A stretch of DNA of 64,000 nucleotides from Perna viridis (taxonomy: Eukaryota). The stretch covers positions 50,137,195-50,201,194 of the forward strand of contig CM074513.1 of NCBI GenBank assembly GCA_037379345.1, written 5' to 3'. This document shows positions 22,242 through 63,908 of this stretch, one piece after another (the stretch's first letter is position 1; every line of letters begins with the position of its first letter). Made by a program: the position numbers and the translations under genes. Under the pieces are notes generated by a model, which made no database searches, had not been told where the DNA came from, and saw nothing but the letters and a program-made list of their open reading frames with translations.

Positions 22242-25200
22242 CTAAAAATGTATGGATCCTTTATACGATGTGTACACTGTGAAACTTTTTGGAAAATACC
22301 TACAACAAACAATATTTCATAAGTATGTAAATATAACATAATGCATAATAAAGTTGAATTTGTTTACTAGCTTATCTTCATGAACTCTTTAACAACGATC
22401 TTCATAATTCTGAAAATGAATTATCGCAATATGTCTTTATTGAATTCTTTTGATTACCACTATAACCTTGTTTCCCTTGGTTACTCTTTTAAAAATGTAT
22501 CCACAAAAATGTATGTTCTTCCTTTGAAATTCAAGTTACTTCTTTTTATGTTGCTCATTTTATCAGTCAAGAAGTGTTGTCATTATTTAATCAAGTATAT
22601 TTGGGTTTTTTAATATTCATAAATATTTCACTTCAATAAACATTGTGACTCAAAGCACTTATTTCTAATAAGAATTAAACTGTTTAAATAGGAACAGATT
22701 GTCTATTTCGTTATAGCTTCGTTTTATTCATATAATACACCCATGCTGATTTCTTTCAATTCGTTCACACATTACCTGATATAAACCTCTGGAGTATCCA
22801 TCATATGTGTTTCACCGTCTATGTTGAATCTAAGGTTTAGATCTCTGGCGTCTGGGGGATTGTCCTCCGTCACTCGAATTCGCAGAGATTTTATATAGGT
22901 GGGCGTCACAAAATGCTTCACAGATTCAAACTGAAACCAGAACCGAGCTGATTTTATTTCATATGAAAACTGTTATCTCAGAATCTCAGAATACAACTTT
23001 ATTTAAAAAGACAAAGATTTGTAACAGGAAAAAAAACATTTATATTAAAGCCACTAAATGATAGTAAATTGACAATATGATAAATAAGTCGTGATCAACT
23101 TACTGACTTTACATACAATTTCGTCACTTTTTAAACGACAAACAATGATTAAAATTCAATTTTATTTGTTAACATAACTCACATATTCGAGGGATAGTCG
23201 ACTTAAGTTAGCAAAGAATTTCAGTAATTCCACTCTGCCACATCTATTAAATTCCATACAACTGAATTGGTCTTTAGTTTCAGGTTTTTTGACATACTGT
23301 CTATCTTCAAATTCCATATCATACGTGCATCCTATCAAGTTAATAATTTTTTTTCTTCGAGTCGCTATTTTAAAGAAAAAAGATCACAACTGACTTAAAA
23401 AGATAAAAAATATATATAGATATCTTTATCTATCTTAAATTGAGTGAATTATAGATCAAACGCTTTATATAGAATTACAACTTTTGAACAAAAATCTATA
23501 TTGAAAGCAACGCCTTTTATCTTAATTTTAAATTCTATGTTTATTTTTGTTGGGGGTCTTTGACTTTTGAAAAAATACTTAAACGGCAGGTTGCAATAAT
23601 TTCTAGCCTTGAGATCACTATGTAGAAGGTCAGGTTGCAATAATTTCTAGCCTTGAGATCACTATGTAGAAGGTCAAACTTAAATGTTTGCTCTACAATT
23701 GAAGAATATTTTTCCTGTTAGACATAGAATATAATGACTAGATGGGAGATCAAAGCAACGAGTCTTCTCGTAACAGGATTTTGCTCTCCGCGACAATCAA
23801 AGACCAGGTTAATATAACGATAATAAAGAGTTATCAAGTAAAAAGCAATGTTCTTATATAGAATGTTCAGTTTGCACACTGGGTTAAATGTAAAGTTCAT
23901 GAAGGTCTTCTTTAAAATAATGAAGATATGCAGCACTACCATTCATGTATCAGTGGTCAAAGAACAAAATCAGGTTTTATCCGTATATCAGCCTGCCTGT
24001 TATCAACACTCGACCGATATCGTCCCGCGGCCCGGTGGCCCTTGGGGTGAAATAGGAGCCTCCGGACGATACCGCATGTAATACAGATTTTTACATGTAA
24101 TATTCAGTATATTTCTGATACGAAATTCCTATGTCAGCCAGCTTTTTGGTAGGAGACAATACATGTCTGATGTAATGGTTAATTGTTATAAATATACATG
24201 AAAACTATTTTGAAATACCTTTCATAGCTGCCTTTTCACTCTTTGATATGCCATCTTGTTCATTCCCATCTCTGAAAATGATGATGAAAGGCTATACATG
24301 TCTCATATAAAAATGAATGATTTCTCTTATAACAATTCTTCCTAGTAGTTAAGTATTTTATATACAACACTGGTGTGCCTCCTACAAACTGTGGTTAAAA
24401 ATTAACAAATGACAAATAAAGAATTTACTTTGAAAGGTCAACTTATGGTTACTATTATACTACACATTTACACGCTGAAAGAACTAGTTTATAATAGGGG
24501 CACATTCAGATAATACGTACTATTTACAAATAAGCAATATATATTGTATAAAAGTTATTACATCTATACAAAGTATCTTACATCATTCCTTCCATTGATA
24601 CTTACAAATATTCGTAAGTTACCTCTAAGTCTACTTCACGTTGCGTCTTTATTAGAATATGCCACAAAGATATAACTATAAAAGAAATGAGTAGTTCGAA
24701 AGTTCTTCTATAAACTGCATAAATTCATTCAGTGTACAATATATGTTTTATTTCATTTTTACATGGTATCTCCTCTTATTGAAAGGAATCAATTCACATT
24801 TGTGTTTATTTAAGTTTCGTTTTAATATTATCTTATTATTATTATTACTATTACTATTTTTATTATTGTTTGTTAGTTTTTTGTTTGTTTTCTTTTTTTA
24901 ATGAATCTACTGAAATCATATTTGCATTACTTTCTAAGTAACAATGGTCATGACATTACAATATAATATACTAACATAGGTATCGTATTGTTCCTAGCCA
25001 TCTAAAATAAACATCTGTATCGTACATAAGGTCTGCATATCCAACATATCCAAAACATATATAACCATATCCAAGAAGTGTGTTGTTGTTAAAACCTCCT
25101 ATAGCATTATATTGATCTTTCTTTCCTGTTGGTTGTAACGTAGTCTTTTTAGAAATATTTAAATCAGGAGGGTTACATGTCAACAAATTGAGTGAGTACA

Positions 25201-57489: not shown

Positions 57490-58340
57490 GATGATGGCGG
57501 CGGGAATCAACATTGTTTTCTGGAAGATAACTGGAAAAGTTTATATCCGATTCAAATGAAACTTTGTGATATTTTTATAGACCAGGTTAGTGAGATCCTT
57601 ATTGATGTGAGGTAAATTTCGTGAAAGGTCAAGGTCACAGCAACCAAAAAATTTAACTTTTTCCATAAAATTGAGGTTTCAGATGATAACTCAAAAAAGT
57701 CTACATCTGATTCAAACCAAACTTTGGGATATTGTTACATACCAGGTGAGATCCCTATTGGTTTATGGAGAATTTGTTTAAGATCAAGGTCAGTTGTCAA
57801 AACACTTCCTCAGGAAAAATATGAGGTTTCTGGATGATAACTCTAATAGTTTATCTCTGGTTCAAATCAAACATTAGGATATTGTTACATACATTTGTAC
57901 CAGAAAACAGTGATCAAATTTTAAGGAAAATTCTTGCTAAATGCAAGTTGAAATTCAATTTTGCTAGTAGAAATTATTTCCTCTTGCTAAAATTCTCTAG
58001 TGAAATTCTGAAGGTCATACAGGCAAGTTCCAGAAATAACCAAAAACACTTAAATTTAGTAAGTATAAATTTTCAGTATTTGCTAAATTAATCTAGTTGA
58101 AAAAATTCTGAAATCCAATCCCTGTTTATTGTGAGATACCTATTGATTTGGATAAAAATTTGGTCACGGTCAGTTATGCTGAAAAATTTACATTTTTGTA
58201 GAAAAATTAGGATTCTAGACAATAATTTAAAAAGTGTACATCTGAACTATCGGATATTGTTTCATAACTGATCATGAATGAAAACACAATTGATTTTGGT
58301 GCAATTTTGTTTCCAGTTAATGTCACAGCTGTCAAAAAAC
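57490..58340 (+). repeat. Helentron-like element with ~150-bp degenerate tandem subrepeats (resumes at 63290-63390)
   Basis: Recurring gatgataactc...tgattcaaa...ctttgggatattgttacatacc...gagatccctattg units at ~57525, 57682, 57833, 58218 and 63306. Confidence 0.7.
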
Positions 58341-58499
58341 ATTTCTTAATGTAGAATTTTTGTAAATTCATGTTTACGGATCTTTGTCATGTCCGCTCTG
58401 TGTTGTTTTTATGATTAGTATTTACATTATGGCCACGGCCAGGCCTTCTGCTTAGCTTTTGCAAAAATCCCTTAAAAAGCATGATTTTGTGACTCATAA

Positions 58500-59595
58500 G
58501 TGTAGAAAATGACACAGGAACTTCACCCAAACGTGGGCAATAGGTACGCCGATGTACTGAGGGCATTAAAAGGGGACTATGGCGACTCAAACTTGAACCC
58601 TTTCATGTTATGCGGTCAACAACCAGAGCATGCAGATGATAGCAAGGACCTCAACGTAGTTGAGAACAGTGTTGGGCATTAACGCCTTCAATTCCAATCC
58701 CCAAGTCATGCCCAAACCCAGTGAGACCTAAGAGTTCATCCAAAGTTAGATATGATACGCCATTAAGGCCAAAAACAGCCCAAAACCAACTTGAAGCTGA
58801 AATTCTCTCACTGAAGGCCGAGTGTAACAATCATGAACTTCAATTGACTAAAGCAAAGCTGGATAAACACCAGGCAGACCTGGCTAGTGCCCTAGCAGTG
58901 GAACTTCAGGACCCACTTCTGTCCAGCAGAACACATTAACTAATCAAAATAATGCCATAACTAATACAGAAGCAAAAAACATTGTCGATTTTTTGTTCCT
59001 AAATTCTGTTGATGCCATAGACGATGAGGGATACATGGTAGACATCGGTCACAGGGCTAAATTAAAATTCAATAAAAAGAAGACTCCATTAAGCCAAGTG
59101 ACAATGGAACAGTGGGGGTATGCTAGTTTAGGAATTATGAAAGACCTAGATTTGGACCCCCAAAACATTGAAGGTTACATCGTAGATACACAGAGTATCT
59201 TCCGCTTAGCATCAGTTCACGTTTGGCACATCATCTTGTAATATGAGAAGGAGTATTGTGATTCACAGGCGAGAGAGGGCTTTAAGTGGGGCAAACCCCA
59301 GGAAGATCTTCGTGATTTTCACCTAGTACTAAAACTGAATAGCCTCACGATGCGTACGTTGAATTCTATGTCTAAGTTCCCAAACAAGGAAAGTTCGTCT
59401 GCTAAACAACAGAATAAAAGGCGTGGCCCATTCGTGCCAGATGGTCGTGAAATATGCCGCAAATTCAACTTAGGAGCATGTGGTTTTACACATTGTAGGA
59501 TGGCTCATCATTGCGCAATTTGCTACTCAAGGGATCATAAGGCGATAGAGCATTCAAAAAGGGAGAACCCCATCATGCAAAATTCAACCAAATAG
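58500..59595 (+). pseudogene. gag-like ORF of the YR retrotransposon (broken)
   Basis: Fragments 58721-58939, 58993-59241, 59350-59595; VTMEQWGYAS, W..I..YEKEY...QA..GFKWG and C-terminal Cys/His finger. Confidence 0.7.
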
Positions 59596-59599
59596 CATT

Positions 59600-60790
59600 T
59601 GTTAAAGCAATTCAACCCAAGCCAACCTACTGTCTTAATTTACAAGCTTGGGAATTGTTGTTACCGTGTGACGATCCTGAATTTCAATTTATCATAGATG
59701 GTGTCAAAAATGTGTTTTCTATGGTTGATCAATTCCCGGATTCAGAAGATATAGTTTTTTGGGAAAATTATCGTTCAGCAATTTCAAACAAAATGTTAGT
59801 TGAAACAGCAATAAAATCTGAGATTGTGAATGGCAATTATGTTGTTACAAAAGTGAAACTGCAGATTACAAATGCATTAGGCAGTGTCCCAAAGGGGAAT
59901 AATTCGATTCACAGACCTTCATTGGAAATTCAAGGGAGATTCAGAATCTACTTATTTTTTCGATAAAAACTATCTTTTGGGGCCGCCAAATCTCCGAGCA
60001 TATTTCAGTCTTTATCTAGCACTGTTTGTAGAATTATGAAATTACAAAATTTTACTGTGATAGCATATTTGGATGATTTTCTTATCATTGAGAGTTCTTA
60101 TGAAAAATGGTAAAAGTGCACTTGATAAATTATTGGGTGTATTAAGATTGTTAGGCTTTCATATTAATTACAGTAAAAGTGATGGACCAGCACAAAAAAT
60201 TGTATTTCACAAGTTATTCAAAGGATGACGACCATTCCTTAGGCACATCATTGATTTAAAAAACTCTCTAACGGCACATTCGGACAAGATCTTATCGATT
60301 GACAATTTTTTTGTTGATCTGAAATGGTGGTTGATTTTCATGAAACAATTTAATGGCAAGAAAAAAATCCTGGATGATAAGCCCATTACAAACATTCAGT
60401 GTGACGCTTGTACAGAAGGGGTGGTGCTTATTTTTCTTGAGACTATTTGTACATCAATTGGAATATTGATATGCCAGATATTTACCCCCTGCATATTAAA
60501 TGTAAAGAAATTATTGTTATGGTGTTGACAATTTCTAGATGGTCAATTACATTGCAAAATAAAAGGATAATAATGTACACTGACAACATGACAGCTAAAA
60601 GCACAATCAGTAAGATGTCAAGTAAAAATTCAATTGTTATGACATATCTGAGACTTCTATTCTTCATTCAAGCATATTTCTATTACTGCCATTTTTATTT
60701 CGGGTAAGAGGAACGTCCTGGCGGACAGCATTTGAAAGCACCACCAGGAACACAAACTTAGTAAAGTCTATGAGTTATTACCTATGAGTT
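59600..60790 (+). pseudogene. RT-RNaseH of the YR retrotransposon (frameshifts, internal deletions)
   Basis: DPEFQFIIDGV, NALGSVPK, then a jump to HWKF...FGAAKSP (motif A region missing), YLDD, DLKWWLIF, CDAC, TDN. Confidence 0.8.
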
Positions 60791-60869
60791 TACAATGTGT
60801 TAGTGATAGCTTTTGTATTTTTGATTTGTTATTTCATATGTCATACATGTATAAATTTGTACATTTTAG

Positions 60870-63028
60870 ATGGTGGTCTAGGTCCACACACCCTCGAAAA
60901 GACTGTGGATAAGTTCAGAAGGCAAGGATGGGCAGAGAGTACACAACTCGTTTATAAGTCACAGTTTAAGTGTTATAATTCTTATATGGCTTTTTGTAAA
61001 CAGAATGCATTGGCTCCGTTACCTATGTCCCATAACGGCATCTCTAGATACATTGGCTCCGTTACCTATGTCCCATAACGGCATCTCTAGATACATTGGC
61101 TCCGTTACCTATGTCGGCATCTCTAGATACATTGGCTCCGTTACCTATGTCCCATAACGGCATCTCTAGATACATTGGCTCCGTTACCTATGTCCCATAA
61201 CGGCATCTCTAGATACATTGGCTCCGTTACCTATGTCCCATAACGGCATCTCTAGATACATTGGCTCCGTTACCTATGTCCCATAACGGCATCTCTAGAT
61301 ACATTGGCTCCGTTACCTATGTCCCATAACGGCATCTCTAGATACATTGGCTCCGTTACCTATGTCCCATAACGGCATCTCTAGATACATTGGCTCCGTT
61401 ACCTATGTCCCATAACGGCATCTCTAGATACATTGGCTCCGTTACCTATGTCCCATAACGGCATCTCTAGATACATTGGCTCCGTTACCTATGTCCCATA
61501 ACGGCATCTCTAGATACATTGGCTCCGTTACCTATGTCCCATAACGGCATCTCTAGATACATTGGCTCCGTTACCTATGTCCCATAACGGCATCTCTAGA
61601 TACATTGGCTCCGTTACCTATGTCGGCATCTCTAGATACATTGGCTCCGTTACCTATGTCCCATAACGGCATCTCTAGATACATTGGCTCCATTACCTAT
61701 GTCCCATAACGGCATCTCTAGATACATTGGCTCCGTTACCTATGTCCCATAACGGCATCTCTAGATACATTGGCTCCGTTACCTATGTCGGCATCTCTAG
61801 ATACATTGGCTCCGTTACCTATGTCCCATAACGGCATCTCTAGATACATTGGCTCCGTTACCTATGTCGGCATCTCTAGATACATTGGCTCCGTTACCTA
61901 TGTCCCATAACGGCATCTCTAGATACATTGGCTCCGTTACCTATGTCCCATAACGGCATCTCTAGATACATTGGCTCCGTTACCTATGTCGGCATCTCTA
62001 GATACATTGGCTCCGTTACCTATGTCCCATAACGGCATCTCTAGATACATTGGCTCCGTTACCTATGTCGGCATCTCTAGATACATTGGCTCCGTTACCT
62101 ATGTCCCATAACGGCATCTCTAGATACATTGGCTCCGTTACCTATGTCCCATAACGGCATCTCTAGATACATTGGCTCCGTTACCTATGTCGGCATCTCT
62201 AGATACATTGGCTCCGTTACCTATGTCGGCATCTCTAGATACATTGCTTTTCTTGCCAATGTTAAAGGTTTTGCTTATAGGACTATTGAAAATTATTTAG
62301 TTATCGTTAAGCATTTACACAAACCATGCGGTATGGCAGATCCAGTGAAGGACCAATGGCACGTTCAGCATGTACTACAGGGAGTAAAACGCGCCTTGGG
62401 AGATGCACAAACTAGTGCTACTTTATTGACTCCTGATATGGCACTTGATATTAAGAAACAGTTAAATCTTTTTAGACTCTTTGATCTATCAGTTTGGTGC
62501 GCTTGTTTGATAGGCTTTTATGGTATGTTAAGACCTGGAAATTTTCTTATTCACGACCCAAATGTTCTGGTTTTGCGTATTTGTCAAAATATGTCTCATG
62601 ATATGGACTACATTATCATGTTTGACTACACAAAGACCATCCAGTTTCGTGTTGTAATGCCATTGATTCAAGGACACCCTCTCTGCCCAGCCTCAGCCAT
62701 TTTCCATTTACTTTGCTTACATGTTATGTTAGGTTCTAATGGACAATCACCCTTATTATGTGGAAGTGTTGTGAAAACATTATCTTACAACAAATTTCTT
62801 GATCATGTGAATTCTATTTTATTGAAGTCAGGAAATAAGTCTCTGTTGACAGGACATTCTTTTTGTAGAGGAGGTGCTACATGGGCGTTCCAGGCTGGTT
62901 TGCCTGGTGAAGCGATTCAGGACATCAGTATGTGGAAAAGCGAGGCTTACCTTAGATACATTGAACCCTCCTTGAACATTAAAATTGGTATCATGCGTAA
63001 GTTTGGGCAGAAGCTCCCTAGCAATTAG
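60870..63028 (+). pseudogene. Tyrosine recombinase interrupted by a tandem array
   Basis: N-terminal AESTQLVYKSQ..Y.AFC before the array; after it FYGMLRPGN, TKT, CPASAI, GHSFCRGGAT (HxxR Arg changed to Cys), WKSEAYLRY. Confidence 0.88.
61009..62242 (+). repeat. Minisatellite array: 30 units (22 x 43 bp, 8 x 36 bp)
   Basis: Unit attggctccgttacctatgtc[ccataac]ggcatctctagatac; only one substitution seen (61692 g>a). Confidence 0.97.
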
Positions 63029-63908
63029 TTTTGTATTACTGTACAACTGTATGTGCATAGAAGAGCTATTGAGTCTTTCACTATTGGTCTCATCATTAGC
63101 AACTTTGAAATGTACATTTTTATTATCATTATTTTTTTTTACTTTATATCCACATCGCTCCTTGGGTCTGGGGTGTTCATACTTTATTAGTCTAAGCCTG
63201 CCTATAATGCTATGTTTATGTATTGTGTTAATCATGTGTTCTTGCAATAAATAATTGCACCCAGTACCATGTTAATTATTGAGACAAGAAGTAAATATAC
63301 TTTCCTGATGATAACTCAAAATGCATCCAATTCAAATGGAACTTTGGGACATTGTTACATACTAGGTAAGTGAGAACCCTATTGATTTAATTTATCTGAA
63401 ATATTTCTTTCTCTAAAATGGAGATGCAACTATCCATTGGTGCATTTCAATTTTTTTTTTGAAAATTTTTAATTGAATTTCAAATTATGTGCAATATAGT
63501 GTCCAAACCATTTGTTTTGTCCATAATAAATTGTTAGTCTCTATGCTTAAGAGTGTCAAAAACTAATATTGTGTCCGCAATTGCCCCAACTGTTTGACCA
63601 CTGTGTTTATATCATACTGCCCTCAACGAAGCTTTTTATTGTTATCGACTATATACACATGTATACTGCTTAGAAGAGTAAAATCAACTCGATAATATGA
63701 TGATAACAGTTGTTAAACATAAATGAAACTTCATTAGACAACATACTTTTGTAAACTGCATTGGAAGCTATTTAATTACATGTTTCAGTCTCTAAGACAG
63801 AGATTTTTGTATGGAATTTGTATGCCTATACTTTATTGTAATTGTTATTATTTCAGGAGAAGACCATAAGTATGATATTTTACTCATGTCTAATCCATTT
63901 TGTTTATT

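What the first reader, a model, noticed from the sequence alone, without database searches (positions are those of the whole stretch)
61009..62242. Near-perfect 30-unit two-letter array amplified from inside a retrotransposon tyrosine recombinase gene
Seen: 43 bp of YR coding sequence (LAPLPMSHNGISRY) bounded by a cattg microhomology has been amplified to 30 units. Two unit types occur, L (43 bp) and S (36 bp, lacking ccataac), in the order LL S L11 S LLL S [LSLLS][LSLLS] S, so there is a 201-bp higher-order repeat and S units are enriched at the 3' end. Only one point substitution is visible in 1234 bp, although the host element is full of stops and frameshifts, so the array is far younger than its host or is being homogenised. 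The L unit folds (ccgtta/taacgg stem, plus atct/agat); the S deletion removes one stem arm. Inference: birth of a satellite from recombinase coding DNA by slippage or rolling-circle amplification. A link to the circular intermediate of YR elements is speculative.
Basis: partly seen in the sequence, partly recalled or inferred. Interest (0 to 1): 0.78.

Follow-up and report, generated by a model that had tools for sequence, protein, structure and literature searches.

The report
Private minisatellite inside a dead retrotransposon gene
A 43-base piece of a broken jumping-gene recombinase in a mussel genome has been copied head-to-tail about 30 times at this one spot; it is a clean but ordinary case of a short tandem repeat born from transposon coding DNA.

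Summary
Window 61008-62241 is a head-to-tail array of 30 units: 22 of 43 bp (L; one carries G>A at 61692) and 8 of 36 bp (S, lacking 7 bp).

The unit comes from coding sequence of the N-terminal core-binding domain of a tyrosine recombinase (YR). The YR belongs to a degraded three-ORF gag/RT/YR retroelement at 58351-63297. A paralogue on another chromosome and protein homologues from other bivalves carry this segment once. Neither unit type occurs anywhere else in the 723-Mb genome.

The flanks of this copy carry 3.3% private substitutions, so about 41 changes would be expected in the array; one is seen. The array is therefore much younger than its host copy, or is kept uniform by turnover.

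- The 201-bp higher-order repeat is matched or exceeded in 60% of shuffles.
- The hairpin is weak (-3.8 kcal/mol, z -1.4).
- The 3' bias of S units is marginal (p 0.045).

This is a single-locus minisatellite of 1.2 kb, not a satellite. No link to circular intermediates is supported. Contigs from independent runs show the L-unit cycle at roughly 4-13 times the depth of the flank contigs. Exact copy number still needs spanning long reads.

The parts
58351..63297 (+). Degraded YR retroelement copy (gag-like, RT/RNase H, YR). This is the extent shared with three paralogues in the same genome.
   Evidence: blastn against paralogues on C1, C5 and C3. Collinear tblastn hits of the three ORFs of the intact relative L033. 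No terminal repeats were found.
58530..59562 (+). gag-like remnant, split over three reading frames
   Evidence: tblastn of the 364-aa ORF1 of L033: 43-60% identity, frames 3, 2 and 1.
59625..60909 (+). RT/RNase H remnant, frameshifted. It lacks about 181 bp at 59910/59911 and about 149 bp at 60207/60208 relative to the paralogues.
   Evidence: tblastn of the 543-aa RVT_1 ORF of L033. Breakpoints from blastn against the paralogues. Weak RVT_1 hit on the C1 paralogue.
60866..61007 (+). YR N-terminal (core-binding domain) coding sequence upstream of the array, open in frame
   Evidence: ORF 60797-61078; alignment A1 with bivalve YR proteins.
61008..62241 (+). The array: 22 L units (43 bp) and 8 S units (36 bp). 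S units start at 61094, 61603, 61768, 61847, 61969, 62048, 62170 and 62206.
   Evidence: Both unit types are unique to this locus in the genome.
61692..61692 (+). The only point substitution in the array (G>A, unit 17)
62242..62246 (+). CATTG: the first 5 bases of a would-be 31st unit, i.e. the direct repeat (microhomology) at the array border
   Evidence: Paralogues read CGTTG or TGTTG at the 5' border and CATTG (C1) or CTTG (C5, beside an 18-bp deletion) at the 3' border.
62243..63028 (+). Rest of the YR reading frame (261 codons plus stop). It is open, but has Cys in place of the catalytic Arg of the HxxR motif and lacks 5 residues after TKTIQFR.
   Evidence: ORF list; 60 homologues down to E 7e-114; alignment A1; weak PF00589 hit, E 0.068.

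Best explanation
This is a locus-private minisatellite that arose inside an already decaying copy of a tyrosine-recombinase retroelement (DIRS order, Ngaro-like three-ORF layout) in a mussel genome.

Proposed sequence of events:
1. A 43-bp stretch of the YR core-binding-domain coding sequence, bordered by a short direct repeat (now CATTG...CATTG), was duplicated once. The likely cause was replication slippage or microhomology-mediated repair.
2. Once two units existed, out-of-register pairing expanded the array to about 30 units. This could be slippage, unequal sister-chromatid exchange, or repair by strand annealing and synthesis.
3. A single 7-bp deletion in one unit created the S type. Block duplications within the array then spread it to 8 units, mainly in the 3' half.
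4. The array is young relative to its host copy and still turning over, which keeps it nearly uniform.

It has no coding capacity: L units shift the frame and carry stop codons. It most likely has no function.

Shown: the anatomy, the single-unit ancestral state, uniqueness in the genome, and the contrast in divergence. Inferred: the slippage and unequal-exchange mechanism, the single origin of S, and the young age.
For: - Anatomy and order of units.
- Single-unit state between the same flanks in the C1 paralogue, which differs at 5 of 43 positions, and in protein P0017.
- The segment aligns to the conserved '...PVPxSxxGISLYIAYLA' stretch of bivalve YR proteins that carry PF13495 or PF00589.
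- L and S units, allowing up to 3 mismatches, occur only here in 723 Mb.
- The host is collinear with an intact gag/RT/YR contig and is broken by frameshifts and two deletions.
- Private substitutions in the flanks of this copy are 74 in 2252 sites, or 3.3%. That predicts about 41 changes in 1234 bp; 1 is seen (Poisson P about 1e-16).
- Every unit shares bases that are derived in this copy: unit position 2 (A here, G in C1 and C5) and position 12 (T here, G in both). Position 27 is inferred only from protein homologues, because C5 lacks that base. So amplification came after part of the copy's decay.
- The edge units are as clean as the inner ones. Old arrays usually have degenerate edges (established knowledge), so this favours a young array.
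- All 8 S units are identical.
- In Logan contigs of four runs from four studies, the 73-nt cyclic contig of the L unit has depth 50.6 against 4.1 for the flank contig in X11, and 72.7 against 5.4-6.5 in X3. In X4 it is 67.8 against about 7-17.
- A 543-nt X11 contig spans the last S unit into the 3' flank.
- Origin of tandem repeats from TE ORFs is a documented process (review PMC9659126).
Against: - No raw long reads could be laid, so the exact number and order of units rest on the assembly alone. Contig depth is only a rough guide, and the tool itself warns that it is not a copy number.
- Youth and continuous homogenisation of an older array cannot be fully separated.
- The 5-bp border repeat may be partly a product of the process rather than its cause. 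If the founding event used only the ancestral TTG, internal junctions would read CATTG anyway, and the first unit could have been converted later.
- X4 and X3 show no contigs over 62160-62263. This may be filtering, or a different 3' end of the array in those animals.
Confidence: 0.8

Rival explanations
1. The array is old, formed soon after this copy inserted, and looks young only because concerted evolution (unequal exchange and conversion) keeps erasing differences.
For: Minisatellites are known to homogenise quickly (established knowledge). The 3.3% against 0.08% contrast does not by itself date the founding event.
Against: The first and last units are as clean as the inner ones. Every unit carries bases derived in this copy's lineage. 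Only two variant types exist in 30 units.
Confidence: 0.2
2. The copy number or order is an assembly artefact: a real but much shorter array was inflated or mis-ordered by the assembler.
For: Near-perfect arrays are hard to assemble. No spanning raw reads were available; all 24 runs offered are held as contigs.
Against: Contigs of the L-unit cycle are roughly 4-13 times as deep as flank contigs in three independent runs. The unit exists at no other locus, so that depth must come from here. The interspersed S units give the array internal landmarks. The S-to-flank junction is seen in an independent run (X11).
Confidence: 0.1
3. Rolling-circle amplification of an excised circle (eccDNA) followed by reinsertion, possibly connected with the circular intermediate of YR elements.
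For: Only the general idea that satellites can expand through circles. An exact block LSLLS occurs twice.
Against: The block duplication is no better than chance. Two unit types interspersed irregularly need several events. A 43-bp double-stranded circle is physically implausible (inference). The array sits exactly at the ancestral position of the unit, more than 1 kb from either end of the element. This copy is broken in gag and RT and has a Cys at the YR catalytic Arg position. For DIRS-1 the extrachromosomal cDNA is mostly linear (PMC7192593).
Confidence: 0.04
4. An independent satellite or minisatellite was inserted into, or captured by, the YR gene.
For: None beyond the presence of an array inside a gene.
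Against: The unit is the YR's own sequence. It is present once in the C1 paralogue, in P0017 and in homologous proteins of other bivalves, and absent elsewhere in the genome.
Confidence: 0.01

Closest known systems
Tandem repeats and satellite DNAs derived from transposable-element sequence, including ORF-derived cases (CR1 ORF2/HinfI in chicken, L1 ORF2/PROsat, gag-derived E3900 in rye, CACTA transposase-derived satDNA; review PMC9659126)
   Same: A stretch of a TE, here coding sequence, becomes the monomer of a head-to-tail array. Slippage, microhomology and unequal exchange are the proposed mechanisms.
   Different: Here the array is a single 1.2-kb locus with a 43-bp unit, not an abundant or dispersed satellite. 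The source is a tyrosine-recombinase gene of a DIRS-order element, which that review does not list (0 occurrences of 'DIRS'). My paper searches found no such case.
Classical minisatellites (VNTRs) with interspersed variant repeats
   Same: Unit of 10-100 bp, tens of copies, one locus, two variant unit types interspersed, near-identity of units, and a possible polarity of variants towards one end.
   Different: Length polymorphism between individuals, the operational hallmark, could not be measured here. The ancestral single-copy state is preserved in paralogues, which is unusually informative.
Retrotransposon-internal tandem repeats that seed plant satellites (Ogre 3' UTR repeats; Vondrak et al., PMC7004042)
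   Same: Short arrays arise inside retroelements and can be the raw material for satellites.
   Different: In those cases the repeats lie in non-coding regions of active families and are spread by transposition. Here the array is in the coding region of one dead copy and is not shared by the other copies.

Membership tests
Minisatellite (VNTR) | Head-to-tail repeats with a unit of about 10-100 bp and an array of about 0.5-30 kb | tested here: met
   Units of 43 and 36 bp, 30 units, 1234 bp.
Minisatellite (VNTR) | Confined to one locus or a few loci | tested here: met
   L and S units with up to 3 mismatches are found only at this locus in 723 Mb.
Minisatellite (VNTR) | Copy-number variation between alleles or individuals | not testable with these tools
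   Only contigs, not raw long reads, were available. The depth ratios of the L-cycle contig to the flank contigs differ between runs, but they are not copy numbers.
Satellite DNA | Long arrays (tens of kb or more) and/or many loci, making a measurable share of the genome | tested here: not met
   One array of 1.2 kb in the whole assembly.
TE-derived tandem repeat | The monomer is homologous to a segment of a transposable element that exists unamplified in other copies | tested here: met
   The C1 paralogue has one unit between the same flanks. P0017 and bivalve YR proteins have the segment once.
DIRS-order (YR) retrotransposon, as host element | Reverse transcriptase/RNase H ORF next to a tyrosine-recombinase ORF, with a gag-like ORF upstream | tested here: met
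   The window region is collinear with the gag (364 aa), RVT_1 (543 aa) and YR (281 aa) ORFs of L033. YR homologues carry PF13495 or PF00589.
DIRS-order (YR) retrotransposon, as host element | Characteristic termini: inverted repeats plus an internal complementary region (DIRS), or split direct repeats (Ngaro/PAT) | tested here: not met
   No terminal direct or inverted repeats were found in 57800-63600 apart from one 32-nt, 84% match lying outside the family-shared sequence. The copy may be truncated, so the superfamily (Ngaro-like or DIRS-like) is left open.
DIRS-order (YR) retrotransposon, as host element | Catalytic R..K..HxxR..[H/W]..Y residues of the recombinase | tested here: not met
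   The window copy and the C5 paralogue read HSFCRGG, where all aligned homologues read HSFRRGG. The other motifs (LRPGNF, TKTIQ, W, Y) are present. The copy is a pseudogene.

The most novel reading that the evidence does not exclude
The locus is a satellite seed caught at the single-locus stage, whose founding was enabled by point mutations in a decaying gene. One CpG-to-CpA change lengthened a 3-bp direct repeat to 5 bp (CATTG...CATTG). Two or three further lineage-specific changes created a 6-bp hairpin within the unit. It would also be the first described tandem array derived from the recombinase gene of a DIRS-order retroelement.
Probability: 0.2. Interest if true: 0.35.

Novelty: new member of a known kind. 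Interest (0 to 1): 0.22.

Why it matters
It is a tidy, fully traceable example of how a tandem repeat starts. The ancestral single-copy state, the border microhomology, the first variant unit and the age contrast with the host copy are all readable in one genome. That makes it a reasonable teaching case, and a candidate polymorphic marker for this mussel. It does not reveal a new mechanism or a new kind of element, because origin of tandem repeats from TE sequence, ORFs included, is already documented.

Tried and rejected
- Pfam on nine ORF pieces of the window element gave nothing at E <= 0.01. Only a weak PF00589 hit at E 0.068 appeared for the YR.
- PDB sequence search gave nothing meaningful.
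- The host element was therefore identified through homologues and an intact relative instead.
Following the tool's own advice, only the 3' part (62030-62800) was laid.
- All runs were contigs, so copy number, RNA status, starts and ends could not be read. Whether X3 and X11 are RNA is only the tool's guess, so I make no claim of transcription.
- The joint and loose ends turned out to be the C5 and C3 paralogues and the 5' flank, not a single-unit allele.
- The higher-order repeat, the L11 run and the hairpin were tested against shuffles and are not beyond chance.
- Terminal repeats of the host element were sought and not found.
- Earlier scan notes held nothing on this array.
- To avoid building a mended gene, the upstream flank with the first unit and the last unit with the downstream flank were always aligned as separate references. 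No collapsed or joined version was made.

Full report
**Observation.** The region was read directly and split at every CATTG.
- Window 61008-62241 consists of 30 head-to-tail units.
- 21 are identical 43-bp units (L). One L carries a G>A at 61692. Eight are identical 36-bp units (S) that lack 7 bp (CCATAAC or, equally, CCCATAA).
- TRF gives period 43, 29.5 copies, score 2090. No other array in the 64-kb window comes close.
- The array is followed by a further CATTG (62242-62246). The amplified 43 bp is therefore bordered by a 5-bp direct repeat.

**What the unit is.**
- In the frame of the ORF that enters the array (60797-61078), the unit reads (A)LAPLPMSHNGISRY(I).
- After the array the same frame continues open for 261 codons to a stop at 63028.
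- That protein has 60 homologues, down to E 7e-114. They include Mytilus and Saccostrea proteins named Tyr-recombinase or core-binding-domain proteins, and several carry PF13495 or PF00589.
- The window protein alone gives only a weak PF00589 hit (E 0.068).
- In alignment A1 the unit corresponds to the conserved stretch '...PVPxSxxGISLYIAYLA' of the N-terminal core-binding domain. Every homologue has it once.

**The host element.**
- A 61%-identical YR (P0005) lies on 3.8-kb contigs directly behind a 543-aa RVT_1 ORF and a 364-aa ORF.
- tblastn of these three ORFs on the window gives collinear hits: gag-like 58530-59562 in three frames, RT 59625-60909 in at least two frames, and YR up to 63019.
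- The host is therefore a YR retroelement of the DIRS order with a compact, Ngaro-like three-ORF layout.
- Three paralogues in the same genome (C1 ~9.648 Mb, C5 ~24.272 Mb, C3 ~38.519 Mb) share window 58351-63297. BLAST identity is 88-95%, about 6-10% substitutions.
- Relative to these paralogues the window copy lacks about 181 bp at 59910/59911 and about 149 bp at 60207/60208.
- The window YR and the C5 copy read HSFCRGG where all homologues read HSFRRGG, i.e. Cys at the catalytic Arg of HxxR. The window YR also lacks five residues after TKTIQFR.
The YR frame itself is open apart from the array.
- No terminal repeats were found, so I leave the superfamily open.

**Ancestral state and uniqueness.**
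- The C1 paralogue has exactly 43 bp between the same flanks, differing from the L unit at 5 positions.
- The C5 paralogue has the unit with an 18-bp deletion. The C3 copy lacks the region.
- Protein P0017, 92% identical, also has the segment once.
- Pattern searches of the whole 723-Mb assembly, allowing 3 mismatches, find the L unit 22 times and the S unit 8 times, all in this array. The reversed control pattern gave 0 hits.
- The array was therefore amplified in place from the recombinase's own coding sequence. It is not an independent satellite.

**Age.**
- In three-way alignments of the flanks with C1 and C5, the window copy has 74 private substitutions in 2252 sites, or 3.3%.
- At that rate 1234 bp should carry about 41 changes. 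One is seen (P about 1e-16).
- All units share bases derived in this copy: unit position 2 (A here, G in C1 and C5) and position 12 (T here, G in both; Leu for the conserved Val).
- Position 27 is probably also derived (Asn, where P0001, P0017 and C1 have Asp).
- The expansion therefore came after part of the copy's decay.
- The first and last units are as clean as the inner ones. Old arrays usually have degenerate edges (established knowledge), so I favour a young array over an old homogenised one. The two cannot be fully separated.

**Mechanism.**
- The 5' border reads CGTTG or TGTTG in the paralogues and CATTG here. A CpG-to-CpA type change may thus have lengthened the border repeat from TTG to CATTG and favoured the founding slippage or microhomology-mediated duplication.
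- That step is inferred. It has an alternative: a founding event on TTG alone would also give CATTG at the internal junctions, with later conversion of the first unit.
- After the first duplication, out-of-register pairing explains growth.
- One 7-bp deletion explains S. Its spread to 8 identical copies, mostly in the 3' half, needs block duplications within the array.

**Claims that fail against shuffles.**
- The [LSLLS]x2 'higher-order repeat' is matched or exceeded in 60% of random orderings.
- The L11 run is matched or exceeded in 12%.
- The 3' bias of S has p = 0.045.
- The CCGTTA/TAACGG stem is real and is lost in S. It is worth only -3.8 kcal/mol with z = -1.38. It may help slippage but is not evidence of anything.
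- A rolling-circle origin or a link to a circular YR intermediate has no support. The array is internal, the copy is dead, and two irregularly interspersed unit types need several events. For DIRS-1 the extrachromosomal cDNA is mostly linear (PMC7192593).

**Is it an assembly artefact?**
- Twenty public runs from eight studies hold at least part of the stretch, eleven of them half of its sampled words or more. All are kept as contigs.
- In each of X3, X4 and X11 a 73-nt contig appears. That length (43 + 30) is what a perfect 43-bp tandem repeat gives in a 31-mer graph.
- Its depth is 72.7, 67.8 and 50.6, against 5.4-6.5, about 7-17 and 4.1 for flank contigs.
- Because the unit exists nowhere else in the genome, this points to roughly ten or more L units in independent animals.
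- A 543-nt X11 contig runs from the last S unit into the 3' flank.
- No single-unit allele was seen. The one joint and the loose ends are the C5 and C3 paralogues and the 5' flank.
- Contigs cannot give a copy number, so the figure of 30 and the exact L/S order still rest on the assembly.

**Comparison with what is known.**
- Tandem repeats and satellites born from TE sequence are well documented, including from ORFs: CR1 ORF2, L1 ORF2, gag and a CACTA transposase (PMC9659126; PMC7004042).
- I found no report of one derived from a DIRS-order recombinase gene.
- By size and distribution this is a minisatellite, not a satellite.

**Verdict.** This is a real, nicely traceable but ordinary feature: a new member of a known kind.

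Noticed in passing
window 23587-23676: A perfect two-copy tandem duplication of 44 bp (100% match), followed by CA, which repeats the first two bases of the unit. It looks like a very young founding step of the same kind of process.
   Followed up: partly
window 62900-62925 (HSFCRGG) and L028:6933-7466: The window copy and the C5 paralogue both have Cys in place of the catalytic Arg of the recombinase HxxR motif, while all ten aligned homologues have Arg. The change may already have been in their common source copy.
   Followed up: partly
L033 and L034 (Logan contigs, 3.8 kb): These contigs look like an intact compact YR retroelement with three open ORFs (364 aa, 543 aa RVT_1, 281 aa YR). The YR is 61% identical to the window's. 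The RT ORF end overlaps the start of the YR frame, as it does in the window copy.
   Followed up: partly
   Followed up: no
window 57861-57892 and 63331-63362: A 32-nt direct repeat (84% identity) lies about 5.5 kb apart, just outside the sequence shared with the paralogues. It is probably chance, but it could be a remnant of the element's termini.
   Followed up: partly
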